Below, one piece after another: positions 12,701-57,344 of a stretch of DNA of 64,000 nucleotides (its first letter is position 1; each line of letters starts with the position of its first letter). The stretch lies in the NCBI GenBank assembly GCA_002269645.1, contig NIVC01000639.1, positions 71,659-135,658 of the forward strand. The letters run 5' to 3'. The DNA is from Macrostomum lignano. Lineage: Eukaryota. Under the pieces are notes generated by a model that ran no database searches, had not been told where the DNA came from, and saw only the letters and a list, made by a program, of their open reading frames with translations. A program made the position numbers and the translations under genes.

Positions 12701-15700
12701 AGCGTGCACCAGTGTCTGTAGCCTAAGTGTGTTTGCACCTGACTTAGCGTGCACCAGTGTCTGTAGCCTAAGTGTGTTTGCACCTGACTTAGCGTGCACC
12801 AGTGTCTGTAGCCTAAGTGTGTTTGCACCTGACTTAGCGTGCACCAGTGTCTGTAGCCTAAGTGTGTTTGCACCTGACTTAGCGTGCACCAGTGTCTGTA
12901 GCCTAAGTGTGTTTGCACCTGACTTAGCGTGCACCAGTGTCTGTAGCCTAAGTGTGTTTGCACCTGACTTAGCGTGCACCAGTGTCTGTAGCCTAAGTGT
13001 GTTTGCACCTGACTTAGCGTGCACCAGTGTCTGTAGCCTAAGTGTGTTTGCACCTGACTTAGCGTGCACCAGTGTCTGTAGCCTAAGTGTGTTTGCACCT
13101 GACTTAGCGTGCACCAGTGTCTGTAGCCTAAGTGTGTTTGCACCTGACTTAGCGTGCACCAGTGTCTGTAGCCTAAGTGTGTTTGCACCTGACTTAGCGT
13201 GCACCAGTGTCTGTAGCCTAAGTGTGTTTGCACCTGACTTAGCGTGCACCAGTGTCTGTAGCCTAAGTGTGTTTGCACCTGACTTAGCGTGCACCAGTGT
13301 CTGTAGCCTAAGTGTGTTTGCACCTGACTTAGCGTGCACCAGTGTCTGTAGCCTAAGTGTGTTTGCACCTGACTTAGCGTGCACCAGTGTCTGTAGCCTA
13401 AGTGTGTTTGCACCTGACTTAGCGTGCACCAGTGTCTGTAGCCTAAGTGTGTTTGCACCTGACTTAGCGTGCACCAGTGTCTGTAGCCTAAGTGTGTTTG
13501 CACCTGACTTAGCGTGCACCAGTGTCTGTAGCCTAAGTGTGTTTGCACCTGACTTAGCGTGCACCAGTGTCTGTAGCCTAAGTGTGTTTGCACCTGACTT
13601 AGCGTGCACCAGTGTCTGTAGCCTAAGTGTGTTTGCACCTGACTTAGCGTGCACCAGTGTCTGTAGCCTAAGTGTGTTTGCACCTGACTTAGCGTGCACC
13701 AGTGTCTGTAGCCTAAGTGTGTTTGCACCTGACTTAGCGTGCACCAGTGTCTGTAGCCTAAGTGTGTTTGCACCTGACTTAGCGTGCACCAGTGTCTGTA
13801 GCCTAAGTGTGTTTGCACCTGACTTAGCGTGCACCAGTGTCTGTAGCCTAAGTGTGTTTGCACCTGACTTAGCGTGCACCAGTGTCTGTAGCCTAAGTGT
13901 GTTTGCACCTGACTTAGCGTGCACCAGTGTCTGTAGCCTAAGTGTGTTTGCACCTGACTTAGCGTGCACCAGTGTCTGTAGCCTAAGTGTGTTTGCACCT
14001 GACTTAGCGTGCACCAGTGTCTGTAGCCTAAGTGTGTTTGCACCTGACTTAGCGTGCACCAGTGTCTGTAGCCTAAGTGTGTTTGCACCTGACTTAGCGT
14101 GCACCAGTGTCTGTAGCCTAAGTGTGTTTGCACCTGACTTAGCGTGCACCAGTGTCTGTAGCCTAAGTGTGTTTGCACCTGACTTAGCGTGCACCAGTGT
14201 CTGTAGCCTAAGTGTGTTTGCACCTGACTTAGCGTGCACCAGTGTCTGTAGCCTAAGTGTGTTTGCACCTGACTTAGCGTGCACCAGTGTCTGTAGCCTA
14301 AGTGTGTTTGCACCTGACTTAGCGTGCACCAGTGTCTGTAGCCTAAGTGTGTTTGCACCTGACTTAGCGTGCACCAGTGTCTGTAGCCTAAGTGTGTTTG
14401 CACCTGACTTAGCGTGCACCAGTGTCTGTAGCCTAAGTGTGTTTGCACCTGACTTAGCGTGCACCAGTGTCTGTAGCCTAAGTGTGTTTGCACCTGACTT
14501 AGCGTGCACCAGTGTCTGTAGCCTAAGTGTGTTTGCACCTGACTTAGCGTGCACCAGTGTCTGTAGCCTAAGTGTGTTTGCACCTGACTTAGCGTGCACC
14601 AGTGTCTGTAGCCTAAGTGTGTTTGCACCTGACTTAGCGTGCACCAGTGTCTGTAGCCTAAGTGTGTTTGCACCTGACTTAGCGTGCACCAGTGTCTGTA
14701 GCCTAAGTGTGTTTGCACCTGACTTAGCGTGCACCAGTGTCTGTAGCCTAAGTGTGTTTGCACCTGACTTAGCGTGCACCAGTGTCTGTAGCCTAAGTGT
14801 GTTTGCACCTGACTTAGCGTGCACCAGTGTCTGTAGCCTAAGTGTGTTTGCACCTGACTTAGCGTGCACCAGTGTCTGTAGCCTAAGTGTGTTTGCACCT
14901 GACTTAGCGTGCACCAGTGTCTGTAGCCTAAGTGTGTTTGCACCTGACTTAGCGTGCACCAGTGTCTGTAGCCTAAGTGTGTTTGCACCTGACTTAGCGT
15001 GCACCAGTGTCTGTAGCCTAAGTGTGTTTGCACCTGACTTAGCGTGCACCAGTGTCTGTAGCCTAAGTGTGTTTGCACCTGACTTAGCGTGCACCAGTGT
15101 CTGTAGCCTAAGTGTGTTTGCACCTGACTTAGCGTGCACCAGTGTCTGTAGCCTAAGTGTGTTTGCACCTGACTTAGCGTGCACCAGTGTCTGTAGCCTA
15201 AGTGTGTTTGCACCTGACTTAGCGTGCACCAGTGTCTGTAGCCTAAGTGTGTTTGCACCTGACTTAGCGTGCACCAGTGTCTGTAGCCTAAGTGTGTTTG
15301 CACCTGACTTAGCGTGCACCAGTGTCTGTAGCCTAAGTGTGTTTGCACCTGACTTAGCGTGCACCAGTGTCTGTAGCCTAAGTGTGTTTGCACCTGACTT
15401 AGCGTGCACCAGTGTCTGTAGCCTAAGTGTGTTTGCACCTGACTTAGCGTGCACCAGTGTCTGTAGCCTAAGTGTGTTTGCACCTGACTTAGCGTGCACC
15501 AGTGTCTGTAGCCTAAGTGTGTTTGCACCTGACTTAGCGTGCACCAGTGTCTGTAGCCTAAGTGTGTTTGCACCTGACTTAGCGTGCACCAGTGTCTGTA
15601 GCCTAAGTGTGTTTGCACCTGACTTAGCGTGCACCAGTGTCTGTAGCCTAAGTGTGTTTGCACCTGACTTAGCGTGCACCAGTGTCTGTAGCCTAAGTGT

Positions 15701-18700
15701 GTTTGCACCTGACTTAGCGTGCACCAGTGTCTGTAGCCTAAGTGTGTTTGCACCTGACTTAGCGTGCACCAGTGTCTGTAGCCTAAGTGTGTTTGCACCT
15801 GACTTAGCGTGCACCAGTGTCTGTAGCCTAAGTGTGTTTGCACCTGACTTAGCGTGCACCAGTGTCTGTAGCCTAAGTGTGTTTGCACCTGACTTAGCGT
15901 GCACCAGTGTCTGTAGCCTAAGTGTGTTTGCACCTGACTTAGCGTGCACCAGTGTCTGTAGCCTAAGTGTGTTTGCACCTGACTTAGCGTGCACCAGTGT
16001 CTGTAGCCTAAGTGTGTTTGCACCTGACTTAGCGTGCACCAGTGTCTGTAGCCTAAGTGTGTTTGCACCTGACTTAGCGTGCACCAGTGTCTGTAGCCTA
16101 AGTGTGTTTGCACCTGACTTAGCGTGCACCAGTGTCTGTAGCCTAAGTGTGTTTGCACCTGACTTAGCGTGCACCAGTGTCTGTAGCCTAAGTGTGTTTG
16201 CACCTGACTTAGCGTGCACCAGTGTCTGTAGCCTAAGTGTGTTTGCACCTGACTTAGCGTGCACCAGTGTCTGTAGCCTAAGTGTGTTTGCACCTGACTT
16301 AGCGTGCACCAGTGTCTGTAGCCTAAGTGTGTTTGCACCTGACTTAGCGTGCACCAGTGTCTGTAGCCTAAGTGTGTTTGCACCTGACTTAGCGTGCACC
16401 AGTGTCTGTAGCCTAAGTGTGTTTGCACCTGACTTAGCGTGCACCAGTGTCTGTAGCCTAAGTGTGTTTGCACCTGACTTAGCGTGCACCAGTGTCTGTA
16501 GCCTAAGTGTGTTTGCACCTGACTTAGCGTGCACCAGTGTCTGTAGCCTAAGTGTGTTTGCACCTGACTTAGCGTGCACCAGTGTCTGTAGCCTAAGTGT
16601 GTTTGCACCTGACTTAGCGTGCACCAGTGTCTGTAGCCTAAGTGTGTTTGCACCTGACTTAGCGTGCACCAGTGTCTGTAGCCTAAGTGTGTTTGCACCT
16701 GACTTAGCGTGCACCAGTGTCTGTAGCCTAAGTGTGTTTGCACCTGACTTAGCGTGCACCAGTGTCTGTAGCCTAAGTGTGTTTGCACCTGACTTAGCGT
16801 GCACCAGTGTCTGTAGCCTAAGTGTGTTTGCACCTGACTTAGCGTGCACCAGTGTCTGTAGCCTAAGTGTGTTTGCACCTGACTTAGCGTGCACCAGTGT
16901 CTGTAGCCTAAGTGTGTTTGCACCTGACTTAGCGTGCACCAGTGTCTGTAGCCTAAGTGTGTTTGCACCTGACTTAGCGTGCACCAGTGTCTGTAGCCTA
17001 AGTGTGTTTGCACCTGACTTAGCGTGCACCAGTGTCTGTAGCCTAAGTGTGTTTGCACCTGACTTAGCGTGCACCAGTGTCTGTAGCCTAAGTGTGTTTG
17101 CACCTGACTTAGCGTGCACCAGTGTCTGTAGCCTAAGTGTGTTTGCACCTGACTTAGCGTGCACCAGTGTCTGTAGCCTAAGTGTGTTTGCACCTGACTT
17201 AGCGTGCACCAGTGTCTGTAGCCTAAGTGTGTTTGCACCTGACTTAGCGTGCACCAGTGTCTGTAGCCTAAGTGTGTTTGCACCTGACTTAGCGTGCACC
17301 AGTGTCTGTAGCCTAAGTGTGTTTGCACCTGACTTAGCGTGCACCAGTGTCTGTAGCCTAAGTGTGTTTGCACCTGACTTAGCGTGCACCAGTGTCTGTA
17401 GCCTAAGTGTGTTTGCACCTGACTTAGCGTGCACCAGTGTCTGTAGCCTAAGTGTGTTTGCACCTGACTTAGCGTGCACCAGTGTCTGTAGCCTAAGTGT
17501 GTTTGCACCTGACTTAGCGTGCACCAGTGTCTGTAGCCTAAGTGTGTTTGCACCTGACTTAGCGTGCACCAGTGTCTGTAGCCTAAGTGTGTTTGCACCT
17601 GACTTAGCGTGCACCAGTGTCTGTAGCCTAAGTGTGTTTGCACCTGACTTAGCGTGCACCAGTGTCTGTAGCCTAAGTGTGTTTGCACCTGACTTAGCGT
17701 GCACCAGTGTCTGTAGCCTAAGTGTGTTTGCACCTGACTTAGCGTGCACCAGTGTCTGTAGCCTAAGTGTGTTTGCACCTGACTTAGCGTGCACCAGTGT
17801 CTGTAGCCTAAGTGTGTTTGCACCTGACTTAGCGTGCACCAGTGTCTGTAGCCTAAGTGTGTTTGCACCTGACTTAGCGTGCACCAGTGTCTGTAGCCTA
17901 AGTGTGTTTGCACCTGACTTAGCGTGCACCAGTGTCTGTAGCCTAAGTGTGTTTGCACCTGACTTAGCGTGCACCAGTGTCTGTAGCCTAAGTGTGTTTG
18001 CACCTGACTTAGCGTGCAACCAGTGTCTGTAGCCTAAGTGTGTTTGCACCTGACTTAGCGTGCACCAGTGTCTGTAGCCTAAGTGTGTTTGCACCTGACT
18101 TAGCGTGCACCAGTGTCTGTAGCCTAAGTGTGTTTGCACCTGACTTAGCGTGCAACCAGTGTCTGTAGCCTAAGTGTGTTTGCACCTGACTTAGCGTGCA
18201 CCAGTGTCTGTAGCCTAAGTGTGTTTGCACCTGACTTAGCGTGCACCAGTGTCTGTAGCCTAAGTGTGTTTGCACCTGACTTAGCGTGCAACCAGTGTCT
18301 GTAGCCTAAGTGTGTTTGCACCTGACTTAGCGTGAACCAACCAGTGTCTGTAGCCTAAGTGTGTTTGCACCTGACTTAGCGTGCACCAGTGTCTGTAGCC
18401 TAAGTGTGTTTGCACCTGACTTAGCGTGAACCAACCAGTGTCTGTAGCCTAAGTGTGTTTGCACCTGACTTAGCGTGCAACCAGTGTCTGTAGCCTAAGT
18501 GTGTTTGCACCTGACTTAGCGTGCACCAGTGTCTGTAGCCTAAGTGTGTTTGCACCTGACTTAGCGTGCACCAGTGTCTGTAGCCTAAGTGTGTTTGCAC
18601 CTGACTTAGCGTGCACCAGTGTCTGTAGCCTAAGTGTGTTTGCACCTGACTTAGCGTGCACCAGTGTCTGTAGCCTAAGTGTGTTTGCACCTGACTTAGC

Positions 18701-21700
18701 GTGCACCAGTGTCTGTAGCCTAAGTGTGTTTGCACCTGACTTAGCGTGCACCAGTGTCTGTAGCCTAAGTGTGTTTGCACCTGACTTAGCGTGCACCAGT
18801 GTCTGTAGCCTAAGTGTGTTTGCACCTGACTTAGCGTGCACCAGTGTCTGTAGCCTAAGTGTGTTTGCACCTGACTTAGCGTGCACCAGTGTCTGTAGCC
18901 TAAGTGTGTTTGCACCTGACTTAGCGTGCACCAGTGTCTGTAGCCTAAGTGTGTTTGCACCTGACTTAGCGTGCACCAGTGTCTGTAGCCTAAGTGTGTT
19001 TGCACCTGACTTAGCGTGCAACCAGTGTCTGTAGCCTAAGTGTGTTTGCACCTGACTTAGCGTGCACCAGTGTCTGTAGCCTAAGTGTGTTTGCACCTGA
19101 CTTAGCGTGCACCAGTGTCTGTAGCCTAAGTGTGTTTGCACCTGACTTAGCGTGCACCAGTGTCTGTAGCCTAAGTGTGTTTGCACCTGACTTAGCGTGC
19201 ACCAGTGTCTGTAGCCTAAGTGTGTTTGCACCTGACTTAGCGTGCACCAGTGTCTGTAGCCTAAGTGTGTTTGCACCTGACTTAGCGTGCACCAGTGTCT
19301 GTAGCCTAAGTGTGTTTGCACCTGACTTAGCGTGCACCAGTGTCTGTAGCCTAAGTGTGTTTGCACCTGACTTAGCGTGCACCAGTGTCTGTAGCCTAAG
19401 TGTGTTTGCACCTGACTTAGCGTGCACCAGTGTCTGTAGCCTAAGTGTGTTTGCACCTGACTTAGCGTGCACCAGTGTCTGTAGCCTAAGTGTGTTTGCA
19501 CCTGACTTAGCGTGCACCAGTGTCTGTAGCCTAAGTGTGTTTGCACCTGACTTAGCGTGCACCAGTGTCTGTAGCCTAAGTGTGTTTGCACCTGACTTAG
19601 CGTGCACCAGTGTCTGTAGCCTAAGTGTGTTTGCACCTGACTTAGCGTGCACCAGTGTCTGTAGCCTAAGTGTGTTTGCACCTGACTTAGCGTGCACCAG
19701 TGTCTGTAGCCTAAGTGTGTTTGCACCTGACTTAGCGTGCACCAGTGTCTGTAGCCTAAGTGTGTTTGCACCTGACTTAGCGTGCACCAGTGTCTGTAGC
19801 CTAAGTGTGTTTGCACCTGACTTAGCGTGCACCAGTGTCTGTAGCCTAAGTGTGTTTGCACCTGACTTAGCGTGCACCAGTGTCTGTAGCCTAAGTGTGT
19901 TTGCACCTGACTTAGCGTGCACCAGTGTCTGTAGCCTAAGTGTGTTTGCACCTGACTTAGCGTGCACCAGTGTCTGTAGCCTAAGTGTGTTTGCACCTGA
20001 CTTAGCGTGCAACCAGTGTCTGTAGCCTAAGTGTGTTTGCACCTGACTTAGCGTGCACCAGTGTCTGTAGCCTAAGTGTGTTTGCACCTGACTTAGCGTG
20101 AACCAACCAGTGTCTGTAGCCTAAGTGTGTTTGCACCTGACTTAGCGTGCAACCAGTGTCTGTAGCCTAAGTGTGTTTGCACCTGACTTAGCGTGAACCA
20201 ACCAGTGTCTGTAGCCTAAGTGTGTTTGCACCTGACTTAGCGTGAACCAGTGTCTGTAGCCTAAGTGTGTTTGCACCTGACTTAGCGTGCACCAGTGTCT
20301 GTAGCCTAAGTGTGTTTGCACCTGACTTAGCGTGCACCAACCAGTGTCTGTAGCCTAAGTGTGTTTGCACCTGACTTAGCGTGCACCAGTGTCTGTAGCC
20401 TAAGTGTGTTTGCACCTGACTTAGCGTGAACCAACCAGTGTCTGTAGCCTAAGTGTGTTTGCACCTGACTTAGCGTGCACCAGTGTCTGTAGCCTAAGTG
20501 TGTTTGCACCTGACTTAGCGTGAACCAACCAGTGTCTGTAGCCTAAGTGTGTTTGCACCTGACTTAGCGTGCACCAACCAGTGTCTGTAGCCTAAATGTG
20601 TTTGCACCTGACTTAGCGTGAACCAACCAGTGTCTGTAGCCTAAGTGTGTTTGCACCTGACTTAGCGTGCACCAGTGTCTGTAGCCTAAGTGTGTTTGCA
20701 CCTGACTTAGCGTGCACCAGTGTCTGTAGCCTAAGTGTGTTTGCACCTGACTTAGCGTGCACCAACCAGTGTCTGTAGCCTAAGTGTGTTTGCACCTGAC
20801 TTAGCGTGCACCAGTGTCTGTAGCCTAAGTGTGTTTGCACCTGACTTAGCGTGCACCAGTGTCTGTAGCCTAAGTGTGTTTGCACCTGACTTAGCGTGCA
20901 CCAGTGTCTGTAGCCTAAGTGTGTTTGCACCTGACTTAGCGTGCAACCAGTGTCTGTAGCCTAAGTGTGTTTGCACCTGACTTAGCGTGAACCAACCAGT
21001 GTCTGTAGCCTAAGTGTGTTTGCACCTGACTTAGCGTGCACCAGTGTCTGTAGCCTAAGTGTGTTTGCACCTGACTTAGCGTGCACCAGTGTCTGTAGCC
21101 TAAGTGTGTTTGCACCTGACTTAGCGTGCACCAACCAGTGTCTGTAGCCTAAGTGTGTTTGCACCTGACTTAGCGTGCACCAGTGTCTGTAGCCTAAGTG
21201 TGTTTGCACCTGACTTAGCGTGCACCAGTGTCTGTAGCCTAAGTGTGTTTGCACCTGACTTAGCGTGCACCAGTGTCTGTAGCCTAAGTGTGTTTGCACC
21301 TGACTTAGCGTGCACCAACCAGTGTCTGTAGCCTAAGTGTGTTTGCACCTGACTTAGCGTGCACCAGTGTCTGTAGCCTAAGTGTGTTTGCACCTGACTT
21401 AGCGTGCAACCAGTGTCTGTAGCCTAAGTGTGTTTGCACCTGACTTAGCGTGCACCAGTGTCTGTAGCCTAAATGTGTTTGCACCTGACTTAGCGTGAAC
21501 CAACCAGTGTCTGTAGCCTAAGTGTGTTTGCACCTGACTTAGCGTGAACCAACCAGTGTCTGTAGCCTAAATGTGTTTGCACCTGACTTAGCGTGAACCA
21601 ACCAGTGTCTGTAGCCTAACTGTGTTTGCACCTGACTTAGCGTGCACCAGTGTCTGTAGCCTAAATGTGTTTGCACCTGACTTAGCGTGAACCAACCAGT

Positions 21701-22290
21701 GTCTGTAGCCTAAGTGTGTTTGCACCTGACTTAGCGTGAACCAACCAGTGTCTGTAGCCTAAGTGTGTTTGCACCTGACTTAGCGTGAACCAACCAGTGT
21801 CTGTAGCCTAAGTGTGTTTGCACCTGACTTAGCGTGAACCAACCATTGTCTGTAGCCTAAATGTGTTTGCGCCTGACTTAGCGTGCACCAACCAGTGTCT
21901 GTAGCCTAAATGTGTTTGCACCTGACTTAGCGTGCACCAACCATTGTCTGTAGCCTAAATATGTTTGCACCTGACTTAGCGTGCACCAACCAGTGTCTGT
22001 AGCCTAAATGTGTTTGTACCTGACTTAGCGTGCACCAACCATTGTCTGTAGCCTAAATATGTTTGTACCTGACTTAGCGTGCACCAACCAGTGTCTGTAG
22101 CCTAAATGTGTTTGTACCTGACTTAGCGTGCACCAACCAGTGTCTGTAGCCTAAATGTGTTTGCGCCTGACTTAGCGTGCACCAACCATTGTCTGTAGCC
22201 TAAATGTGTTTGCGCCTGACTTAGCGTGCACCAACCATTGTCTGTAGCCTAAATATGTTTTTACCTGACTTAGCGTGCGCCAGTGTCTAT
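3752..22290. repeat. Satellite array, 45-bp monomer GTGTCTGTAGCCTAAGTGTGTTTGCACCTGACTTAGCGTGCACCA, about 410 copies
   Basis: Read directly. Apparently identical monomers from about 4900 to 18000; 44-bp variants at the left edge; 46- and 49-bp variants plus substitutions at the right edge. Confidence 0.99.
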
Positions 22291-23237: not shown

Positions 23238-24647
23238 ATGGCGAAGCAATTGACAGTCCGTTATGTCTTCTATCTGATGCTTCTCGTTTGCTGCGGCACT
23301 GAAGCTGCCTGCGAACAGTGCTCTGCTGTGTTTGAGCTGCGGACACGCGACTGCCCGACCGCCCCTTTTGCGACTGCTCCTGTTGCGGCTCAAAGTGAGT
23401 CGGAGTGCGTGCTGCGCTGCACTCTCAGCCCCGAGTGCCGGCTGTCCGTGTACCTGACCGACAGTGCTACATGCTACAGCCTGCCGGCAGCGGCTCTGAC
23501 AGCCGATGGACAATCGACTGCCTTGACGACGCAATCCATGGAACCACCGACGACGGCTACTACTACAACACCGAGTATTACGACTACCACACCGACTACG
23601 ACAACTAACACACCGAGTACGACGACTACCACACCGACTACTACTACCACACCGACTACTACAACGACACCGACTACTACGACTACCACACCTACAACTA
23701 CGACGACTACACCGACTACAACGACTACCACACCGACTACAACGACTACCACACCGACTACAACGACTACCACACCGACTACAACGACTACCACACCGAC
23801 TACTACAACGACTACCACACCGACTACTACGACTACCACACCGACTACTACAACGACTACCACACCGACTACTACGACGACGACTACACCGACTACAACG
23901 ACTACCACACCTACAACTACGACGACTACACCGACTACAACGACTACCACACCGACTACAACGACTACCACACCAACTACTACAACGACGACTACACCGA
24001 CTACGACGACTACCACACCGACTACTACAACGACGACTACACGGACTACGACGACGACTACACCTACAACTACGACTACCACACCAACTACTACAACGAC
24101 GACTACACCGACTACGACGACTACCACACCGACTACAACGACTACCACACCAACTACTACAACGACTACCACACCGACTACTACGACTACCACACCGACT
24201 ACTACAACGACTACCACACCGACTACTACGACGACGACTACACCGACTACGACGACTACCACACCGACTACAACGACTACCACACCTACAACTACGACGA
24301 CTACACCGACTACAACGACGACTACACCGACTTCGACGACTACCACACCGACTACTACAACGACACCGACTACAACGACTACCACACCTACAACTACGAC
24401 GACTACACCGACTACAACGACTACAACACCTACAACTACGACTACCACACCGACTACAACGACTACCACACCTACAACTACCACACCTACAACTGCTCTG
24501 TCTCTGGCAGTTTGCATTGGGGGCAGAGTAGCTCAAACCCGGGTTCGAATCCCACCGCCCGTCGGCTGTTTGCATTGGGGGCAGAGTAGCTCAAACCCGG
24601 GTTCGAATCCCACCGCCCGTCGGCAGTTTGCATTGGGGGCAGAGTAG
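23238..24647 (+). CDS. Secreted PAN/apple-domain protein with a long Thr/Pro mucin-like region
   Basis: Signal-peptide-like MAKQLTVRYVFYLMLLVCCGTEA; Cys pattern ECVLRCTLSPECRLSVYLTDSATCYSL typical of PAN/apple domains; then about 310 aa of PTTTTTT repeats. The true 3' end is uncertain because the ORF runs into 58-bp repeats. Confidence 0.75.
   Translation: MAKQLTVRYVFYLMLLVCCGTEAACEQCSAVFELRTRDCPTAPFATAPVAAQSESECVLRCTLSPECRLSVYLTDSATCYSLPAAALTADGQSTALTTQSMEPPTTATTTTPSITTTTPTTTTNTPSTTTTTPTTTTTPTTTTTPTTTTTTPTTTTTTPTTTTTTPTTTTTTPTTTTTTPTTTTTTPTTTTTTTPTTTTTTPTTTTTTTPTTTTTTTPTTTTTTPTTTTTTPTTTTTTPTTTTTTPTTTTTTTPTTTTTTPTTTTTTTRTTTTTTPTTTTTTPTTTTTTTPTTTTTTPTTTTTTPTTTTTTTPTTTTTTPTTTTTTTPTTTTTTTPTTTTTTPTTTTTTPTTTTTTPTTTTTTPTSTTTTPTTTTTPTTTTTTPTTTTTTPTTTTTTPTTTTTTPTTTTTTPTTTTPTTALSLAVCIGGRVAQTRVRIPPPVGCLHWGQSSSNPGSNPTARRQFALGAE
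23550..24495 (+). repeat. Coding ACN-rich tandem repeat (PTTTTT(T) units, 18-24 bp)
   Basis: acaccgactacaacgactacc-type units with synonymous variation, all in frame. Confidence 0.95.
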
Positions 24648-24770
24648 CTCAAACCCGGGTTCGAATCCCACCGCCCGCCGGCAGTTTGCATTGGGGGCAG
24701 AGTAGCTCAAACCCGGGTTCGAATCCTACCGCCCGCCGGCAGTTTGCATTGGGGGCAGAGTAGTTCAAAC
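24506..24770 (+). repeat. 58-bp tandem repeat (about 4.6 copies) with tRNA-like elements
   Basis: Unit GTTTGCATTGGGGGCAGAGTAGCTCAAACCCGGGTTCGAATCCCACCGCCCGTCGGCA contains a B-box/T-arm GGTTCGAATCCC and an A-box-like TAGCTCAA. Confidence 0.85.
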
Positions 24771-25282
24771 ATTAAAATTTAAACATTTATATTCAGTTAA
24801 TCAGTAACGTCCTACTAAGTAGTTGGGTAGTTGGTTGGGCTTGAGTAGTAAGTAGCTACTATGTAGAAATTTCTGTAATTTTGCGTACTCTTTACCTGTA
24901 ATTGTAAATACGAGCAGACTGACTCGCAAAGCAAACTTAAAAGAAACGAATAATGAGCAGGCATTCTGAAGCGAATGTCTTTAATCGTCTTTATTCGCCT
25001 TTATTCTCTGACTGCTTTCACTGTGTTACAGAAGCGAATATTCTCTGCTAGGCTCGGTTCTGAAACCAGATATGCAGTATCAGTATTTGGTGCATCAATA
25101 GCAGCAAAATGTAGGGATAAAATCTGTTTGAGTCATAGAAAGGCTTAGGGAAGCGCTGTTCGAGTACATTCAGAATGGCGGTCCAGCTTTTTGTTTCTGT
25201 AGCAAAAATAAATTTTCTACTGATAAATTTCAAACTGCATTTTCGAAGAACTGGTTCGGGTTTTCTTGGGACTGACCAAAAA

Positions 25283-25735
25283 CATTCCACCTATGATTGA
25301 TGACCAACAAGCATTCCACCTACGACTGATGACCAACAAGCATTCCACATATGACTGATGACCAACAAGCATTCCACCTAATGACTGATGACCAACAAGC
25401 ATTCCACCCATGACCGATGAACTGATGACCAACAAGCATTCCACCTATGACCGATGAACTGATGACCAACAAGCATTCCATCTATGACTGATGACCAACA
25501 AGCATTCCACATATGACTGATGACCAACAAGCATTCCACATATGACTGATGACCAACAAGCATTCCACCTAATGACTGATGACCAACAAGCATTCCACTA
25601 TGACTGATGACCAACAAGCATTCCACTATGACTGATGACCAACAAGCATTCCACCTATGACTGATGACCAACAAGCATTCCACCTATGACCGATGAACTG
25701 ATGACCAATAAGCATTCCAGCTATGACCAACAAGC
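25283..25735. repeat. Minisatellite, about 29-bp unit TGATGACCAACAAGCATTCCACCTATGAC
   Basis: About 14 copies with length variants. Confidence 0.95.
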
Positions 25736-25944: not shown

Positions 25945-27582
25945 TCAGATCGGCGGTTCGAGTCTGCACAGCAATCTTAAACCGTCTGCGGCTGACGAAT
26001 TGACGGACTCAGTTGCTGCGACCGTCGGCTCGGCCAGCGTTTCATCGGCGGCGGGGGGAGGGCGACCGGCGGTCTGGTAGATTGGGCAGAAGGCGCCTTC
26101 GGGGCAGGCGCACAGCACAGTGCCACGCACCGCCCGGCCGGCCGGGCCCGCAGGCTCGAAGTAGCAGGGCGAACCCTGCTGGCAGACCGGCTGCGGGATG
26201 GTGGCTTTCTGGAGATCCATGCTCTGGACTAACCACCTCACCACCCAGCATGCTCTGGACTAACCACCTCACCACCCAGCATGCTCTGGACTAACCACCT
26301 CACCACCCAGCATGCTCTCAGTAAACGGCACCCAGCACGTCAACCATCAAGCTTCATGAGCGACGTTTTGTCAGCACTTAGAGCACTCCAATCTTGTCTT
26401 CATACGCAGCACACAACCAACCCACCTTGTCCTCGCACACAGCTCACTACCAACCCACCTTGTGTTCGCACACAGCTCACTACCAACCCACCTTGTCCTC
26501 GCACACAGCTCACTACCAACCCACCTTGTGTTCGCATACAGCTAACTACCAACCTACCTTGTCCTCGTACACAGCTCACTACCAACCCACCTTGTGTTCG
26601 CACACAGCTCACTACCAACCCACCTTGTCCTCGTACACAGCTCACTACCAACCCACCTTGTCCTCGTACACAGCTCACTACCAACCCACCTTGTGTTCGC
26701 ACACGAACTCCACAATCCGGCTGGCGGTGGCGACGCCCCGAGAGTCCGCCAGCTGCCTCTCATAGACAAAGCTGTGAACTGAGTTGCTGGGAGCTTCGGT
26801 TCCATTTCGCGGCGGACAGCGGCAAAGCACCGCCTGAAGGTCCAGCCACCAGCCGATCTGCCTCAGCTGGAAGGTCACCTGGTCCCGGCTGCAGGTTGGC
26901 AGCCCGACCGGGTAGACGGGGCTGCAGAATTGCAGCTGCATCTCGCTGTCTCGAACGCCTGAGCAGTGATGTGTGGGGGAAGCTTCTCAACCTTTCCTCC
27001 CCATCGAAACCTACCATGCTGCTTTCGATGCTTACTTGCCTCTTCTGTTAGTTTCAAATCATCTCAGACTCCTCTTGGACTCCATGATGACCACACAGTG
27101 CCCTTCAAGAGCGAAACCCTATGATTGACAGTGCCCTCCGAGAACATTACCCCATGACCAACAGTGCCCTCTGAAAACATTTCTCCGTGACCAACAGTGC
27201 CCTTCATGATCAGCAAAGCTCTCCATGAAAAACTCCTGGAGCCGCGCTCACCGCTAGCGCCGATCCACCTGACCGTGAGCGACGTGTCCGAGTGGCGCCA
27301 ACTTCTCTCGCAGTTGTTGCCAGGGGGACACCGGCAGCGGGACTCGGCGAAGATTCCGTCCCTGACGCCCAAGGCCGCGGCCACTTTGCCGCTCCAGAAA
27401 CCGCCACGCTCCAGGTGGGCACAGGGGCAGACGGCGCCGTTGCCCCGCGCCGCCGACGCGAGCAGCCGCTGTGGAGACTCGGGACTGTCGGCACCTCCTG
27501 CCTGCCGCAGCAGCGAAGCCACAAGCAGCAGCAGCAGCAGCTGACCGAGCGCCGGCTCTCCTCCGGAGGCTGCAAGCCGCAT
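25945..27582 (-). CDS. argos: Argos/giant-lens-like secreted protein, 3 exons, 287 aa, 16 Cys
   Basis: Exons 27582-27252, 26958-26690 and 26208-25945 join in frame through GT-AG sites (G|GTGAGC..CTCAG|GC, phase 1; AAG|GTGGGT..CTCCAG|AAA, phase 0); total 864 nt. Signal peptide, then three Cys modules: SRCRCPPGNNC..QFCSP (6 Cys), LPTCSRDQVTFQL..LCRCPPRN..EFVC (4 Cys), PVCQQGSPC..LCACPEGAFCP..LLC (6 Cys). These match the recalled Drosophila Argos motifs KMCQPVHKLPVC, HCRCPRN and RCQRKQPC..LCQCPKGHRCP. Confidence 0.75.
26218..26318. repeat. 31-bp unit x3 at the acceptor end of argos-like intron 2
   Basis: CATGCTCTGGACTAACCACCTCACCACCCAG repeated; the minus strand contains GTCCAG|AGC. Confidence 0.9.
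26409..26704. repeat. 33-bp minisatellite x9 built from the exon 2/intron 2 donor junction of the argos-like gene
   Basis: Minus-strand unit GTGTGCGAACACAAG|GTGGGTTGGTAGTGAGCT; the first copy is the real junction. Confidence 0.9.
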
Positions 27583-28169: not shown

Positions 28170-28920
28170 TCCATCTCTGACCGCCTGTCCCCCTTGTTTG
28201 GCCCTGCTTCACCTCCATCTCTGACCGCCTGTCCCCCTTGTTTGTCCTTGCTTCACCTCCATCTCTGACCGCCTGTCCCCCTTGTTTGTCCTTGCTTCAC
28301 CTCCATCTCTGACCGCCTGTCCCCCTTGTTTGTCCCTGCTTCAACTCCATCTCTGACCGTCTGTCCCCCTTGTTTGTCCCTGCTTCACCTCCATCTCTGA
28401 CCGCCTGTCCCCCTTGTTTGTCCTTGCTTCACCTCCATCTCTGACCGCCTGTCCCCCTTGTTTGTCCTTGCTTCACCTCCATCTCTGACCGCCTGTCCCC
28501 CTTGTTTGGCCCTGCTTCACCTCCATCTCTGACCGCCTGTCCCCCTTGTTTGTCCTTGCTTCACCTCCATCTCTGACCGCCTGTCCCCCTTGTTTGTCCT
28601 TGCTTCACCTCCATCTCTGACCGCCTGTCCCCCTTGTTTGTCCCTGCTTCAACTCCATCTCTGACCGTCTGTCCCCCTTGTTTGTCCCTGCTTCACCTCC
28701 ATCTCTGACCGCCTGTCCCCCTTGTTTGTCCCTGCTTTACCTCCATCTCTGACCGCCTGTCCCCCTTGTTTGTCCCTGCTTCAACTCCATCTCTGACCGC
28801 CTGTCCCCCTTGTTTGTCCCTGCTTCAACTCCATCTCTGACCACCTGTCCCCCTTGTTTGTCCCTGCTTCACCTCCATTTCTGACCGCCTGTCCCCCTTG
28901 TTTGTCCCTGCTTCACCTCC
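28170..28920. repeat. 44-bp pyrimidine-rich minisatellite, about 17 copies
   Basis: Unit CCATCTCTGACCGCCTGTCCCCCTTGTTTGTCCTTGCTTCACCT. Confidence 0.95.
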
Positions 28921-28937
28921 AGCTATGAACGGCTGAG

Positions 28938-28949
28938 CGTCTGTCTGTA

Positions 28950-29030
<81 letters not shown>

Positions 29031-29058
29031 GCCTGTCTGCCTGTCTCTCTGTCTGATC
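28938..29058. repeat. (GTCT)n microsatellite
   Basis: Read directly. Confidence 0.97.
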
Positions 29059-29854
29059 CGTGTATTCTATTTTTAATTTTCAGCCTTCCTCTCCCGTCAG
29101 GAGAGCCCTTAGTCAGTCCAGGCATCCCCAAGCAGTCCTGACGCCGAGGAAGGCCCGAGCTCTCTGCCGCTTAGCCTCGAAATGCCTGCCTTGTTTGGCC
29201 AGGAAAATCCTCTTAACGGATTATCGCGTCTTCCTCGCCCAAAAGAGGATTTTTATCCCTCCGAGCCACAGGGGCGGCTCCGGCGGAAAGAAATTGAAGA
29301 CGCATTAGCGCAGCTTCTGCACATCTCAGCCAGTCGGACTTTCGTCTCCCATCTTATAAAAGAATTTCTCCTGAATGAAGCTACTTTTTGGTGTATTAGG
29401 GAGGGAGCAATGATTGGGAGGCTGATTGAAGCTCAACATCAAATGGGAGCAGGCGGGAATCTCAAGAAGACAGCGGAGACTCAGCCGTAGGGGCAATTTT
29501 CTGCTCTTAGGCATGAGCATGCATGGCCGGGTTTGAGTTCGATTGCTCTGATTTAGAGATAGAGATAGAGGATGGAGATAGGGGGATACAGATAGGGAAT
29601 AATGATAGGGGATAGAGATAGAGAGATAGAGATAGGGAGGGGGCAGAAATAGGGGGTAGAAATAGGGAGTAGAAATAGGGGGTGGAGATACCTACATCTC
29701 TATGCAAGGACAAAGATGATGTCAGTGGGGAACCATTGAGAGATAGGAAATCAGGTAAATAAATAGAGGCCGCAGCGAACGAACACCCGGCCAGATCAGG
29801 TCGGCATTTCCTATTGTAAGGGCAAGAGGAACGAACCAGCTTTTCATGTGCGGC

Positions 29855-29985
29855 CTGGCTTTGATCTGGCCATGGGACTGCACTGGGATTCGGTTGCCTG
29901 GCTTTGATCTGGCCATGGGACTGCACTGGGATTCGGCGGCCTGGCTTTGATCTGGCCATGGGACTGCACTGGGATTCGGCGGCCG
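29855..29985. repeat. 43-bp unit x3
   Basis: CCTGGCTTTGATCTGGCCATGGGACTGCACTGGGATTCGG(T/C)(T/G)G repeated. Confidence 0.9.
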
Positions 29986-29989
29986 AATC

Positions 29990-31106
29990 CAATGAGTCTA
30001 TTAACTCTCCAATGAGTCTACTCACTCTCCAATGAGTCTACTCACTCTCCAATGAGTCTATTCACTCTCCATTGAGTCTATTCACTCTCCAATGAGTCTA
30101 TTCACTCTCCATTGAGTCTATTCACTCTCAAATACGTCTGTTCACTCTCCATTGAGTCTATTCACTCTCCGGTGAGTTTATTCACTCTCCAATGAGTCTA
30201 TTCACTCTCAAATACGTCTGTTCACTCTCCTATGAGTATATTCACTCTCCATTGAGTCTATTCACTCTCCAATAAGTGTATTCACTCTCCATTGAGTCTA
30301 TTCACTCTCCAATAAGTGTATTCACTCTCCATTGAGTCTATTCACTCTCCATTGAGTCTATTCACTCTCAAATACGTCTGTTCACTCTCCTATGATTCTA
30401 TTCACTCTCCATTGAGTCTATTCACTCTCCATTGAGTCTATTCACTCTCCAATAAGTGTATTCACTCTCCATTGAGTCTATTCACTCTCCAATGAGTCTA
30501 TTCACTCTCCAATGAGCCTATTCACTCTCCAATGAGTCTATTCACTCTCCGATGAGTCTATTCACTCTCCAATGAGTCTTTTCACTCTCCAATGAGTCTT
30601 TTCACTCTCCAATGAGTCTATTCACTCTCCAATGAGTCTTTTCACTCTCCGATGAGTCTATTCACTCTCCAATGAGTCTTTTCACTCTCCAATGAGTCTA
30701 TTCACTCTCCGATGAGTCTATTCACTCTCCAATGAGTCTTTTCACTCTCCAATGAGTCTTTTCACTCTCCAATGAGTCTATTCACTCTCCAATGAGTCTT
30801 TTCACTCTCCAATGAGTATTTTCACTCTCCGATGAGTCTATTCACTCTCCGATGAGTCTATTCACTCTCCGATGAGTCTATTCACTCTCCAATGAGTCTT
30901 TTCACTCTCCAATGAGTCTTTTCATTCTCCAATGAGTCTATTCACTCTCCAATGAGTCTTTTCACTCTCCGATGAGTCTATTCACTCTCCGATGAGTCTA
31001 TTCACTCTCCGATGAGTCTATTCACTCTCCGATGAGTCTATTCACTCTCCGATGAGTCTATTCACTCTCCGATGAGTCTATTCACTCTCCAATGAGTCTA
31101 TTCACT
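29990..31106. repeat. 20-bp minisatellite TTCACTCTCCAATGAGTCTA, about 55 copies
   Basis: Exact 20-bp phase with point variants. Confidence 0.97.
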
Positions 31107-31484
31107 CAATCGATGCACGTACCCTCTGAACAATATTTTTACTTTCCAAACCAGCCTTTTTGCTTTTAACACCATTCATTCAGTATAAAATGATTTTATG
31201 CACTCGCAAGCAGTCCCTTCACTGCCGGAGTCGCTCCATTCACTGCATCAATCGATTCCAGCTCTCCAACCAGAGCCGCTGCATCCATTAGCAAATGCTG
31301 GCAAAGTCTCCCCAAGCCAGAATTCATAGAGGCGGGCCATTTGAGAAGTGCTCAGCCTCCACCGCCTTCATCCTGGCAGGAGATCGAGGCCGCCTCGCGA
31401 TTGGACCGCTCTCCATCAACCTCATACTTTGGCCTGATAGCTTGAGCCCCGAGTCTTGGGTCCCGGGGTTCGAGTCTCTGCACG

Positions 31485-31487
<3 letters not shown>

Positions 31488-31534
<47 letters not shown>
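31488..31534. repeat. (TC)n microsatellite in a GC-rich island
   Basis: Read directly. Confidence 0.95.
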
Positions 31535-31539
<5 letters not shown>

Positions 31540-32149
31540 TTCCGCTTGGAAGCCGCACAGACCGGAGCTGCTGCGGAGCCGGCGGCCGCTTCCAGTTGAT
31601 CGCCAACGGGCCGTTCTGGACCGCCGCAGGAGCCGCCCGCGAAGTGAGCGGCCTAATTGCATTAGCCAGGCGGGAGCAGCGATGGAGAGGGGGGGAGCGG
31701 GCATTCGAATCCCCGAGTCAGCCCCCCCCCCCACCTTGGCTGCTATGCTCCAACAGGGAAAGTCCGCAGGGAAAGCGCATGCAGGAGATTTTGCTCTGCC
31801 GATCAGAGTTCAAAGTTTTCGTGCGTTATTTTTTGTTTAAATAAGGCCCGAGTCGTGTGCAATTTACTTTGGCAGATCTCGCTGAGTCCGGCTTGGAGCC
31901 GGCGCAGCGCTCTGCACTTTTAATTCCTTCCAGCTCATTGGGATTAAGCACGCACGAAGTGCTTGAGCAACTTCACAGGACTGCCCGGTGTGATAGGAAT
32001 TAATGCGTGGATTTTATCAAACATTCAGGGAATTCGGTCTGCATTCGATAACCCACTGGTGTTCGGGTTGTTAATCTTATTAACATGTAAGTGATCGGAT
32101 CCACTTGGGTGATTAAATATATAGTGAAGTGATTCGATCCACTAACTGG

Positions 32150-33165
32150 AGTTGTGAGATTTATTAGATGATGAGTGATTAGATCTACTGGAGTGATTAG
32201 ATCTACTGGGGGTTGATTAAATCCACTGGGTTGATTAGATCTACTGGGTTGATTAGATCTACTGGGTTGATTAGATCTACTGGGTGATTGGATCTACTGA
32301 GTATTGATTAGATCTACTGGGTTGATTATATCTACTGGGTTAAGATCTACTGGGTGATTGGATCTACGGAGTATTGATTAGATCTACTGGGGGTTGATTA
32401 GATCTACTGGGGTGATTAGATCTACTGGGTTTAGATCCACTGGCTGATTAGATGTACCGGGGGTTGATTAGATCTACTGGGCTTAGATCTACTGGGTGAT
32501 TAGATATACTGGGGGTTGATTAGATCTACTGGGCTTAGATCTACTGGGTCGATTAGATCGACTGGGGGTTGATTAGATCTACTGGGCTTAAATCTACAGG
32601 GTGATTGAATCTACTGGGTTGATTAGATCGACTGGGGGTTGATTAGATCTACTGGGCTTAAATCTACAGGGTGATTAGATCTACTGGGTTGATTAGATCT
32701 ACTGGATGATTAGATCTACTGGGTGATTAGATCTACTGGATGATTAGATCTACTGGGGGTTGATTAGATCTACTGGGTGATTAGATCTACTGGGTGATTA
32801 GATCGACTGGGGGCTGATTAGATCTACTGGGCTTAGATCTACTGGGTGATTAGATCTACTGGGGGTTGATTAGATCTACTGGGTTGATTAGATCGACTGG
32901 GGTGATTAGATCTACTGGGTGATTAGATCTACTGGGTGATTAGATCTACTGGGTGATTAGATCTACTGGGGTGATTAGATCTACTGGGTTGATTAGATCG
33001 ACTGGGGTGATTAGATCTACTGGGCTTATAACTACTGGGTGATTAGATCTACTGGGTGATTAGATCTACTGGGTGATTAGATCTACTGGATGATTAGATA
33101 TACTGGGGGTTGATTAGATCTACTGGGGGTTGATTAGATCTACTGGGGTTGATTAGACCGACTGT
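32150..33165. repeat. Variable 15-21-bp minisatellite around GATTAGATCTACTGGG
   Basis: Core AGATCT palindrome with a variable G-run. Confidence 0.93.
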
Positions 33166-53147: not shown

Positions 53148-53759
53148 GTCTTTGCCTTCTAGAATCTTTCCCCTTTAACAATTTGTTGGCACACAATTTG
53201 CCTTTACTATTTAGCTTCAGAATTTTCGTTTATTAAAGTTAATATTATGTCACCTTAATGGTTACTAAAGCAGACCATATTTTATATTCCATATTTTGCA
53301 TAATAGCTTGCACAGGTGGCATCTGAACTGAAATAGAAGCTTTTTATATAAAAAGCAAATCGGAATTTTTTACTAAAGTCTAGGAAAGTGCAATGATGAT
53401 GACTCAGCAGTTGTGCAATTTAAATCCCTTTCAGCTTCCCTGTCTTCCCTGTCTTTGCCTTCTAGAATCTTTCCCCCTTTAACAAATTTGTTTAACAATT
53501 TGTTGGCACACAATTTGCCTTTACTATTTAGCTTCAGAATTTTCGTTTATTAAAGTTAATATTATGTCACCTTAATGGTTACTAAAGCAGACCATATTTT
53601 ATATTCCATATTTTGCATAATAGCTTGCACAGGTGGCATCTGAACTGAAATAGAAGCTTTTTATATAAAAAGCAAATCGGAATTTTTTACTAAAGTCTAG
53701 GAAAGTGCAATGATGATGACTCAGCAGTTGTGCAATTTAAATCCCTTTATGCTTCCCTG
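53148..53759. repeat. About 303-bp tandem duplication immediately upstream of and overlapping the EDEM1 start
   Basis: GTCTTTGCCTTCTAGAATC... starts at 53148 and again at 53451; the copies are near-identical. Confidence 0.92.
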
Positions 53760-57320: not shown

Positions 57321-57344
57321 GTCGCTGCCTTGGATCGCTGAGTG

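What the first reader, a model, noticed from the sequence alone, without database searches (positions are those of the whole stretch)
25945..27582. Intact Argos-like EGF-ligand trap in an apparently non-insect genome
Seen: three exons splice in frame into a 287-aa secreted protein with 6+4+6 cysteines, and the introns fall near module boundaries. Known: Drosophila Argos has three such disulfide-bonded modules that clamp and sequester the EGFR ligand Spitz; it is characterised mainly in insects. Inference: if this is a flatworm, it may have a secreted EGFR feedback antagonist relevant to EGFR-dependent regeneration and patterning. No single ORF in the track contains the whole gene, so it is easy to miss. 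Module 1 differs from Argos in the spacing of its first two Cys.
Basis: partly seen in the sequence, partly recalled or inferred. Interest (0 to 1): 0.78.

Follow-up and report, generated by a model that had tools for sequence, protein, structure and literature searches.

The report
Flatworm Argos-like secreted cysteine-rich protein gene
This is a real, intact three-exon gene of the flatworm Macrostomum lignano for a secreted 16-cysteine protein that is a distant relative of the fly EGF-ligand trap Argos; the family is filed in databases only as "unknown function" (DUF5731), and whether it traps EGF ligands has not been tested.

Summary
On the minus strand, three exons (27582-27252, 26958-26690, 26208/26190-25945) join in frame through GT-AG introns to give a secreted protein with 16 cysteines. 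The window is Macrostomum lignano, since the product is 99% identical to UniProt A0A1I8H2S3, a truncated 202-aa model that lacks the third module.

The protein belongs to Pfam DUF5731 (66.7 bits). I found this family only in flatworms: Macrostomum, flukes, tapeworms and a monogenean. It does not reach Pfam's Argos threshold, but several independent lines link it to Argos:
- Argos is the only PDB sequence hit.
- Profile-profile score is 62.6 (E 2e-8), against at most 21.8 for reversed and shuffled controls.
- An arthropod-Argos HMM scores it 26.2 bits, against at most 13.3 for 2000 shuffles.
- Twelve consecutive cysteines co-align (16 versus 16 overall).
- An AlphaFold model built from flatworm sequences alone matches only Argos structures in the PDB (E 4e-6).
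- The Schistosoma gene has the 4-exon, phase 0,1,0 layout reported for mollusc Argos-like genes.

A 2025 paper already described Argos-like "two-finger" proteins across protostomes, without naming flatworms among its hits. This is therefore a new member of a known kind. EGF-ligand trapping is inferred, not shown.

The parts
27252..27582 (-). Exon 1: start codon, signal peptide (hydrophobic run LLLLLLVASLL) and most of module 1 (CPC...CRCPPGNNC). Ends at donor G|GTGAGC, phase 1.
   Evidence: Hit by tblastn with cestode and trematode DUF5731 proteins. The intron position and phase match Schistosoma rodhaini (GTD|D, phase 1) and the M. lignano paralogue.
26959..27251 (-). Intron 1 (293 nt, GT...AG). 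Carries a 33-bp minisatellite at 27087-27203.
26690..26958 (-). Exon 2: last Cys of module 1 (QFC) and all of module 2 (LPTC...CRCP...FVC). It is the core of the Pfam DUF5731 match. Donor AAG|GTGGGT, phase 0.
   Evidence: The same exon limits appear in Schistosoma exon 3 (DMRDYEF...MTCATK) and in the single-exon fragments P0030-P0032.
26191..26689 (-). Intron 2, with limits given for the favoured acceptor. Contains a 33-bp minisatellite (26393-26704) that starts inside the exon 2 donor region and repeats the donor motif, and a 31-bp repeat (26218-26318) that repeats the AG at 26224.
   Evidence: Read-through past the first donor meets a stop (VGW*), so only the first donor keeps the frame.
25945..26190 (-). 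Exon 3: module 3 (PVC-x5-C...LCACPEGAFCP...LLC) and stop TGA at 25947-25945.
   Evidence: The 26190 acceptor is supported by the Schistosoma K|PQC junction, by the paralogue's annotated cccgcag|CCCCCCTGC junction and by the 6-column gap in the family alignment.

Best explanation
The locus is an intact gene of Macrostomum lignano. It encodes a secreted protein of about 281-287 aa with eight predicted disulfides. The protein is built from three small beta-sheet 'two-finger' modules and belongs to the flatworm-wide family Pfam DUF5731.

That family is a divergent branch of the protostome Argos-like three-domain two-finger (2FTX) proteins, and so a distant homologue of Drosophila Argos. I put the homology at about 0.9.

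By analogy with Argos, the most likely mechanism is as follows. The protein is secreted and acts outside the cell as a soluble binder. It clamps a small disulfide-rich ligand, most plausibly an EGF- or neuregulin-type ligand of the worm's expanded EGFR system, between modules 2 and 3, keeping the ligand off its receptor. I put this at about 0.4.

Shown here: the gene structure, the family membership, and the Argos relationship by sequence, fold and gene structure. Inferred: secretion (from the N-terminal hydrophobic segment), ligand binding, the identity of the ligand, and any feedback regulation.
For: Gene and family:
- In-frame GT-AG model.
- DUF5731 match of 66.7 bits against a cut-off of 27.1.
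- 99% identical to M. lignano A0A1I8H2S3.
- Family members in Macrostomum, cestodes, trematodes and a monogenean.

Link to Argos:
- Argos (3c9a) is the only PDB sequence hit, E 0.008.
- hhalign of the flatworm profile against an arthropod Argos profile gives 95.4% probability, E 2e-8, over 149 columns. The score is 62.6, against at most 21.8 for reversed and 30 column-shuffled controls.
- A HMM of 22 arthropod Argos sequences scores this protein 26.2 bits, against at most 13.3 for 2000 shuffles. This protein is the most Argos-like member of its family.
- Twelve consecutive Cys fall in the same columns as Argos C50-C186. The motifs CRCPxGxxC, CxPV, LPxC, RD, CRCP, NS, PC and LCxCPxGxxCP are shared. 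Both proteins have 16 Cys.
- An AlphaFold2 model from a flatworm-only alignment (pTM 0.56, modules 1-2 at pLDDT 70-90) has only two significant PDB matches, both Argos (E 4e-6 and 5e-5). The next hit is at E 0.48.

Gene structure:
- The Schistosoma orthologue has 4 exons with phases 0,1,0: signal peptide / D1 / end of D1 plus D2 / D3. This is the layout PMC12514838 reports for mollusc endogenous Argos-like genes.
- The D2/D3 intron is phase 0 in the same inter-Cys linker in beetle and horseshoe-crab argos.

Constraint and context:
- Core identity is 71-83% among trematodes and 51-58% between cestodes and trematodes, which argues for a conserved partner.
- M. lignano has 8 EGFRs (PMC4914847).
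Against: - The Pfam Argos model does not hit this protein.
- The flatworm profile finds nothing in the PDB by hmmsearch.
- A phmmer search of 1.84 billion representatives returned eleven flatworm-family proteins (three of them from unnamed samples) plus one weak hit to an unnamed 1908-aa protein, and no Argos.
- TM-scores to Argos are low (0.28-0.39) and module 3 of the model has low confidence (pLDDT 40-64).
- Identity to Argos is about 20-30% and lies mostly in scaffold residues (Cys, Pro). I could not check conservation of the ligand-contact surface.
- Argos is the only member of the wider family with a known ligand. The C. elegans relative has no knockout phenotype (PMC12514838).
- There are no expression or binding data for any DUF5731 protein, and no paper mentions the family.
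Confidence: 0.4

Rival explanations
1. Same fold and ancestry, different job. The protein is a secreted three-module two-finger protein that binds something other than an EGF-family ligand, such as another growth factor, a receptor ectodomain or an ion channel, as three-finger/Ly6-type proteins often do. It has no role in EGFR signalling.
For: - The protostome 2FTX group splits into 12 sequence clusters, and only Argos has a known ligand. Related conotoxins are judged unlikely to bind growth factors (PMC12514838).
- The flatworm family falls below the Pfam Argos threshold.
- The residues shared with Argos are mostly structural.
Against: - Argos is the best and only structural and sequence match.
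- All three modules are kept, including D3, which Argos needs for ligand binding.
- Strong conservation across flatworms fits a conserved developmental partner.
- None of these points excludes a non-EGF ligand.
Confidence: 0.4
2. The resemblance to Argos is convergent. DUF5731 would be an unrelated cysteine-rich family, for example of the Dickkopf/colipase, CART or EGF-like kind, that happens to share cysteine spacing.
For: - The Pfam Argos HMM is not matched.
- There is a weak CART hit at E 0.59.
- Cysteine-rich proteins are prone to spurious profile matches.
Against: - Reversed and shuffled controls reach only a third of the real hhalign score.
- 2000 composition-matched shuffles reach 13.3 bits at most, against 26.2 for the real sequence.
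- Non-Cys motifs are shared as well.
- Foldseek finds only Argos, and no Dickkopf, colipase or CART structure, at E<0.4.
- The gene structure matches mollusc Argos-like genes.
Confidence: 0.07
3. The window copy is a non-functional duplicate. M. lignano carries many duplicated genes, and this copy would be an unexpressed or decaying paralogue or homeologue.
For: - At least one other near-identical copy exists. P0001 and P0002 differ at a few residues, and the P0002 model reads exon 1 in another frame.
- The introns are invaded by minisatellites, one of which overlaps the exon 2 donor.
- No RNA evidence was obtainable.
Against: - All three exons are open, with canonical splice sites.
- All 16 Cys and the family motifs are intact.
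- The minisatellite leaves the first donor and the reading frame untouched.
Confidence: 0.08

Closest known systems
Drosophila Argos (giant-lens; PDB 3C9A/3CGU; Pfam PF11581) and its arthropod orthologues
   Same: - Secreted protein with three small disulfide-bonded two-finger modules.
- 16 Cys in the same order, 12 of them co-aligned in one local alignment.
- Shared motifs CRCPxGxxC, LPxC, RD, CRCP, NS and LCxCPxGxxCP.
- Only significant PDB fold match.
- Phase-0 intron in the same linker between modules 2 and 3.
   Different: - Below the Pfam Argos threshold, with about 20-30% identity.
- The first two Cys are C-x-C rather than C-x5-C.
- No long flexible inserts of the Drosophila kind.
- The intron inside module 1 is phase 1 and lies about 10 residues upstream, whereas it is phase 2 after the next Cys in a beetle.
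- Ligand binding is untested.
Protostome three-domain 'two-finger toxin fold' (2FTX) Argos-like proteins (Protein Sci 2025, PMC12514838), e.g. mollusc endogenous Argos-like protein, C. elegans M6.4, Capitella R7U7Q8
   Same: - Signal peptide plus three 2FTX modules without flexible inserts.
- Conserved cysteine framework.
- Unknown function.
- The Schistosoma DUF5731 gene has the same 4-exon, phase 0,1,0 layout, with the same exon-to-domain mapping, as the mollusc genes.
   Different: - The paper names molluscs, nematodes, tardigrades, arthropods and one annelid among its hits. Flatworms appear only as animals that have EGFR pathways.
- I could not place DUF5731 among its 12 clusters, because its sequence sets were not available.
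- The Macrostomum genes have lost the first intron.
Pfam DUF5731 (PF19002), flatworm proteins annotated as hypothetical
   Same: - Full member at 66.7 bits, with conserved motifs CAWLERGG, TFK.IGTDD, AFELRQ.GTWL, CRC, MTC and C.CP...CP.Y.
- Same intron positions.
   Different: - The Macrostomum proteins keep one extra cysteine pair (C52 and C83, 16 Cys in total) that the parasitic members lack (14 Cys) but Argos has.
- They are only 31-36% identical to the parasite proteins.
- The Pfam model covers only module 2 and the start of module 3.

Membership tests
Argos proper (Pfam PF11581, arthropod giant-lens orthologues) | Match to the curated Pfam Argos HMM above its gathering score (25 bits) | tested here: not met
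   No hit for the 287-aa model at E<=10. The truncated public model P0001 scores 12.9 bits, E 0.12. Only 2 of 22 flatworm family members hit at all, best E 3.4e-4. All 22 arthropod sequences hit strongly.
Argos proper (Pfam PF11581, arthropod giant-lens orthologues) | Sixteen-cysteine framework in three modules (6+4+6) | tested here: met
   The Argos crystal construct P0033 has 16 Cys and the window protein has 16. Twelve consecutive Cys occupy the same HMM columns. The two N-terminal Cys and the C-terminal Cys correspond by order only, and the spacing of the first pair differs.
Argos proper (Pfam PF11581, arthropod giant-lens orthologues) | Three-dimensional fold of three two-finger beta domains superposable on 3C9A/3CGU | tested here: inconclusive
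   An AF2 model from a flatworm-only alignment finds only Argos in the PDB (E 4.2e-6 and 5.4e-5, probability 1.00). However, TM-scores are 0.28-0.39, rmsd 9-10 A, and module 3 has pLDDT 40-64.
Argos proper (Pfam PF11581, arthropod giant-lens orthologues) | Binds and sequesters an EGF-domain ligand (Spitz) between D2 and D3 | not testable with these tools
   No co-folding or binding assay was available. The paper that defines the interface (Klein 2008) was not held.
Argos proper (Pfam PF11581, arthropod giant-lens orthologues) | Transcription induced by EGFR signalling (negative feedback) | not testable with these tools
   No expression data were accessible.
Protostome three-domain 2FTX / Argos-like proteins (PMC12514838) | Statistically supported remote homology to Argos-family profiles | tested here: met
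   hhalign gives 95.4% probability, E 2e-8, score 62.6, against controls of at most 21.8. The Argos HMM gives 26.2 bits, against at most 13.3 for 2000 shuffles.
Protostome three-domain 2FTX / Argos-like proteins (PMC12514838) | N-terminal signal sequence (secretory protein) | tested here: met
   By inspection only: an N-terminal hydrophobic run at residues 14-25, predicted as a helix at 11-28. Homologues also start with hydrophobic segments. No dedicated signal-peptide predictor was run.
Protostome three-domain 2FTX / Argos-like proteins (PMC12514838) | Gene layout of endogenous lophotrochozoan members: 4 exons, phases 0,1,0; signal = exon 1, D1 = exon 2 plus the start of exon 3, D2 = exon 3, D3 = exon 4 | tested here: met
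   The Schistosoma rodhaini DUF5731 gene has phases 0,1,0 with this exact mapping (against the paper's description). The window gene and its paralogue keep the last two introns (phases 1 and 0) and lack the first.
Pfam DUF5731 (PF19002) | HMM match above the gathering score (27.1 bits) | tested here: met
   66.7 bits, E 2.9e-18, residues 112-229. All 22 aligned relatives match.
Other small cysteine-rich folds (Dickkopf/colipase, CART, EGF) | HMM or fold match better than the match to Argos | tested here: not met
   The only other Pfam hit is CART at E 0.59. No such structures appear among the Foldseek hits, and everything after Argos has E>=0.48.

The most novel reading that the evidence does not exclude
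DUF5731 is the flatworm counterpart of Argos. It would be a secreted EGF/neuregulin-ligand trap conserved from free-living Macrostomum to flukes and tapeworms. That would make it the first extracellular EGFR antagonist outside arthropods. It would act on the EGFR signalling that regulates cell proliferation and differentiation in flatworm regeneration and tapeworm germinative-cell proliferation. In the parasites it might also bind host EGF.
Probability: 0.25. Interest if true: 0.75.

Novelty: new member of a known kind. Interest (0 to 1): 0.5.

Why it matters
EGFR signalling regulates cell proliferation and differentiation during regeneration in planarians, and germinative-cell proliferation in the tapeworm Echinococcus (PMC4914847, PMC5344531). 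No secreted antagonist of the pathway came up for flatworms in my literature searches. The 2016 survey of the pathway never mentions Argos, and no searchable paper mentions DUF5731.

Linking this flatworm-wide 'unknown function' family to Argos gives a concrete, testable candidate. It can be tested in a genetically tractable regenerating flatworm and in medically important parasites.

It also extends the recently proposed protostome Argos-like group to Platyhelminthes and adds gene-structure evidence for its common origin. Finally, it shows that the public M. lignano model is truncated and lacks the module that Argos needs for ligand binding.

If the protein does not bind EGF ligands, the finding is still a useful annotation, but an ordinary one.

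Tried and rejected
- Single-sequence AlphaFold2 gave an unusable model (pLDDT 37), so I redid it with a 22-sequence flatworm alignment.
- hmmsearch of the flatworm profile against PDB sequences gave no hit at E<=10. The parasite-dominated profile is further from Argos than the Macrostomum sequence itself.
- The word-indexed protein search with the single protein found only two M. lignano entries. The exhaustive phmmer search returned eleven flatworm-family proteins plus one weak hit to an unnamed 1908-aa protein, and no Argos.
- I tried to look up the spliced 287-aa protein in assemblies, hoping for an intron-less transcript contig. The junctions therefore have no RNA support.
- The Klein 2008 structure paper and the supplements of the 2025 paper were not held. 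I could not score conservation of Spitz-contact residues or place the family among the 12 published clusters.
- I considered the alternative exon-1 donor CAG|GTGGAT (phase 2) and rejected it. It does not fit the in-frame acceptor, and the phase-1 position is conserved in Schistosoma and in the paralogue.
- I rejected downstream copies of the exon-2 donor inside the 33-bp minisatellite, because read-through hits a stop at once.
- No second copy of the gene lies in the window, and ARAGORN finds no tRNA genes in the window.
Full report
**1. What is in the sequence.**

The feature lies on the minus strand.
- An ATG at 27582 opens an ORF that encodes a hydrophobic N-terminal segment followed by a cysteine-rich stretch.
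- The frame closes soon after a strong donor (AGCG|GTGAGC; last exon base 27252, phase 1).
- An acceptor (ctgctcAG|GC) at 26958 restores the frame.
- Exon 2 runs to AAG|GTGGGT (last base 26690, phase 0).
- Exon 3 ends at TGA 25947-25945.

No single ORF contains the gene. The coordinates, the in-frame splicing and the cysteine count are therefore all confirmed.

**2. Organism and public annotation.**

The product is 99% identical over 200 aa to UniProt A0A1I8H2S3 of Macrostomum lignano, and 95% identical over exon 2 to A0A1I8FGZ7. Both are named only 'DUF5731 domain-containing protein'. The window is therefore M. lignano, a free-living macrostomorph flatworm. The window's repeat content is extreme: 39 tandem-repeat rows, including an 18.5-kb satellite.

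The public 202-aa model stops two residues into intron 2 (…CEHKVG) and so lacks the whole third module. The other public model reads exon 1 in a wrong frame.

**3. Family.**

Pfam places residues 112-229 in DUF5731 (PF19002) at 66.7 bits, against a cut-off of 27.1. The Pfam Argos model (PF11581) gives no hit.

An exhaustive phmmer search of 1.84 billion representatives returned twelve proteins. A profile search of the 5.8-billion-protein set returned seventeen. All named relatives are flatworm proteins:
- M. lignano (two genes);
- cestodes (Mesocestoides, Hymenolepis, Rodentolepis, Sparganum);
- trematodes (Opisthorchis, Clonorchis, Paragonimus, Fasciola, Calicophoron, Schistosoma, Trichobilharzia, Heterobilharzia);
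- a monogenean (Cichlidogyrus).

None has a functional name, and no searchable paper contains 'DUF5731'.

The family alignment shows conserved motifs: CAWLERGG, TFK-IGTDD, FC-P-Y, AFELRQ-GTWL, CRC, MTC, C-x5-CY-E, C-x-CP-x4-CP-Y and a C-terminal Cys. Core identity is 71-83% among trematodes and 51-58% between cestodes and trematodes. That is strong purifying selection, unlike fast-evolving toxins.

The parasite proteins have 14 Cys. The two Macrostomum genes have 16, with an extra pair at C52 and C83.

**4. Support for the gene model from relatives.**

Cestode and trematode proteins hit exactly the three exon intervals by tblastn and nothing else in the window.

The Schistosoma rodhaini gene has four exons with intron phases 0, 1, 0.
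- Its second intron splits the codon after …IGTD in phase 1. This is the same codon and phase as window intron 1 (…IGAS-G|VRD).
- Its third intron is …MTCATK|PQC in phase 0. This is the same place as the window donor …FVCEHK|.

The second M. lignano gene (NCBI PAA91273.1, locus L005) has the same layout. Its annotated junction is CGRM|PPC, with an acceptor context of cccgcag|CC.

The window has three in-frame AGs for exon 3: 26223, 26208 and 26190. Only 26190 (cccgcag|CCGGTCTGC, giving EHK|PVC) reproduces three things: the family-wide C-x5-C spacing, the Schistosoma junction, and the paralogue junction. It also removes the 6-column gap in the alignment. I therefore favour a 281-aa product, but only RNA can decide.

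**5. Is it related to Argos?**

The flatworm profile also finds nothing among PDB sequences. Six other lines agree with a relationship.

(a) The only PDB sequence hit of the single protein is Argos 3C9A (E 0.008), with cysteines aligned across all three modules.

(b) Profile-profile comparison of 17 flatworm sequences with 22 arthropod Argos sequences gives 95.4% probability, E 2e-8, over 149 columns. The score is 62.6. A reversed Argos or flatworm profile reaches at most 21.8, and 30 column shuffles reach at most 21.4.

(c) A HMM of the full-length arthropod Argos alignment scores the window protein 26.2 bits. The best of 2000 composition-matched shuffles scores 13.3. The window protein scores higher than any other flatworm member.

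(d) In that alignment twelve consecutive cysteines (C83…C235 in the 281-aa numbering) fall in the columns of Argos C50…C186. Non-cysteine matches are CRCPxGxxC, CxPV, LPxC, RD, CRCP, NS, PC and LCxCPxGxxCP. Both proteins have 16 Cys.

(e) An AlphaFold2 model was made from flatworm sequences only, so that Argos could not leak in through the alignment. It has pTM 0.56, with modules 1-2 at pLDDT 70-90. Its only significant PDB matches are unliganded Argos (E 4.2e-6) and Spitz-bound Argos (E 5.4e-5), and the next hit is at E 0.48.
- Caveats: TM-scores are low (0.28-0.39), module 3 is poorly modelled (pLDDT 40-64), and Argos was probably in AlphaFold's training data.

(f) Gene structure. The 2025 paper reports that endogenous mollusc Argos-like genes have four exons with phases 0,1,0. 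In them the signal peptide is on exon 1, D1 is on exon 2 plus the start of exon 3, D2 is on exon 3, and D3 is on exon 4 (PMC12514838). That is exactly the Schistosoma DUF5731 layout. In arthropod argos (beetle and horseshoe crab) the D2/D3 intron is also phase 0 in the same inter-cysteine linker. The beetle's D1 intron is phase 2 at a different spot.

I conclude, at about 0.9, that DUF5731 is a divergent flatworm branch of the Argos-like three-domain two-finger family. It is not a member of Argos proper as Pfam defines it.

**6. What is already known.**

Argos orthologues are not confined to insects. The search returned mites, collembolans, crustaceans and a horseshoe crab.

A 2025 paper (Protein Sci 34:e70333, PMC12514838) named the fold '2FTX'. 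It found about 1800 Argos-like secreted proteins in molluscs, nematodes, tardigrades and arthropods, plus an annelid example. It speculated that some modulate EGFR signalling, and it found none in deuterostomes.
- Flatworms are mentioned only as animals with EGFR pathways, not among the hits.

The main survey of the EGFR pathway in flatworms lists 8 EGFRs for M. lignano but never mentions Argos or any antagonist (PMC4914847).

The new element is therefore modest but real. It consists of the flatworm clade, its equation with DUF5731, and the gene-structure evidence.

**7. Mechanism.**

*Shown:*
- an intact gene;
- a cysteine framework and predicted fold of the Argos type;
- all three modules retained;
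- strong conservation across flatworms.

*Inferred:*
- The protein is secreted. This rests on the N-terminal hydrophobic segment alone, read by eye.
- Like Argos, it acts as a soluble clamp that sequesters a small disulfide-rich ligand, most plausibly an EGF/NRG ligand.

I give EGF-ligand trapping about 0.4. I give a different extracellular partner about the same. Convergence and a dead copy together get about 0.15.

The main reasons for caution are these:
- the residues shared with Argos are scaffold residues;
- the ligand-contact surface could not be examined;
- Argos is the only member of the wider family with a known ligand;
- the C. elegans relative has no reported knockout phenotype.

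**8. Verdict.**

Novelty is 'new member of a known kind'. Interest is moderate at 0.5. The finding gives flatworm biology a specific candidate for a secreted EGFR-pathway antagonist and corrects a truncated public model, but the general idea was published in 2025 and no function is shown.

Noticed in passing
window 3762-22288: An 18.5-kb satellite of a 45-bp unit (about 409 copies, 99% matches). It creates artificial ORFs of more than 4000 aa in several frames.
   Followed up: no
window 26393-26704 (minus-strand intron 2 and the end of exon 2): A 33-bp minisatellite (9.5 copies) begins inside the last 15 nt of exon 2, so it repeats the donor motif CAAG|GTGGGT about nine times. Its unit is a multiple of three, but read-through meets a stop at once. 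A 31-bp repeat at 26218-26318 likewise repeats the AG at 26224. The repeats appear to have been seeded from the exon-intron boundaries.
   Followed up: partly
window 23562-25728, 28170-33164, 41883-43911, 54395-61291 and others: More than twenty separate minisatellite arrays (units of 17-58 bp, up to 65 copies) fill much of the intergenic and intronic sequence. GC content swings between 33% and 61% over 2-kb windows.
   Followed up: no
window 24506-24770: A 58-bp tandem repeat (4.6 copies) whose unit contains a tRNA-like T-arm/B-box motif (GGTTCGAATCC). ARAGORN finds no tRNA in the window, so this may be a fragment of a tRNA-derived SINE.
   Followed up: partly
window 53710-54348 (+): An ORF with a clear match to the start of glycosyl hydrolase family 47 (alpha-mannosidase; E 3.9e-25). 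It is probably an exon of a neighbouring gene.
   Followed up: partly
window 41309-41935 (+): An ORF matching the Pfam family PF00231 'ATP synthase' (E 1.9e-24). It is probably an exon of a neighbouring gene, and it abuts a 20-bp minisatellite at 41883-43183.
   Followed up: partly
L005 5402-7212 (M. lignano NIVC01000092.1): A second M. lignano DUF5731/Argos-like gene with the same three-exon layout and the 16-Cys type of module 1. Its NCBI model (PAA91273.1, 99 aa) starts inside exon 2, and its UniProt model (A0A1I8FV53) is a frame-shifted chimera named 'H(+)-exporting diphosphatase'. Its intron 1 begins with a (GACA)n microsatellite.
   Followed up: partly
protein family alignment (A2), no window coordinates: Parasitic flatworm members have 14 Cys and lack the equivalents of C52 and C83. 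Macrostomum and Argos both keep these two, which suggests one module-1 disulfide was lost in the parasite lineage. No planarian (triclad) member appeared in either database search. Whether this reflects absence or poor sampling is unknown.
   Followed up: partly
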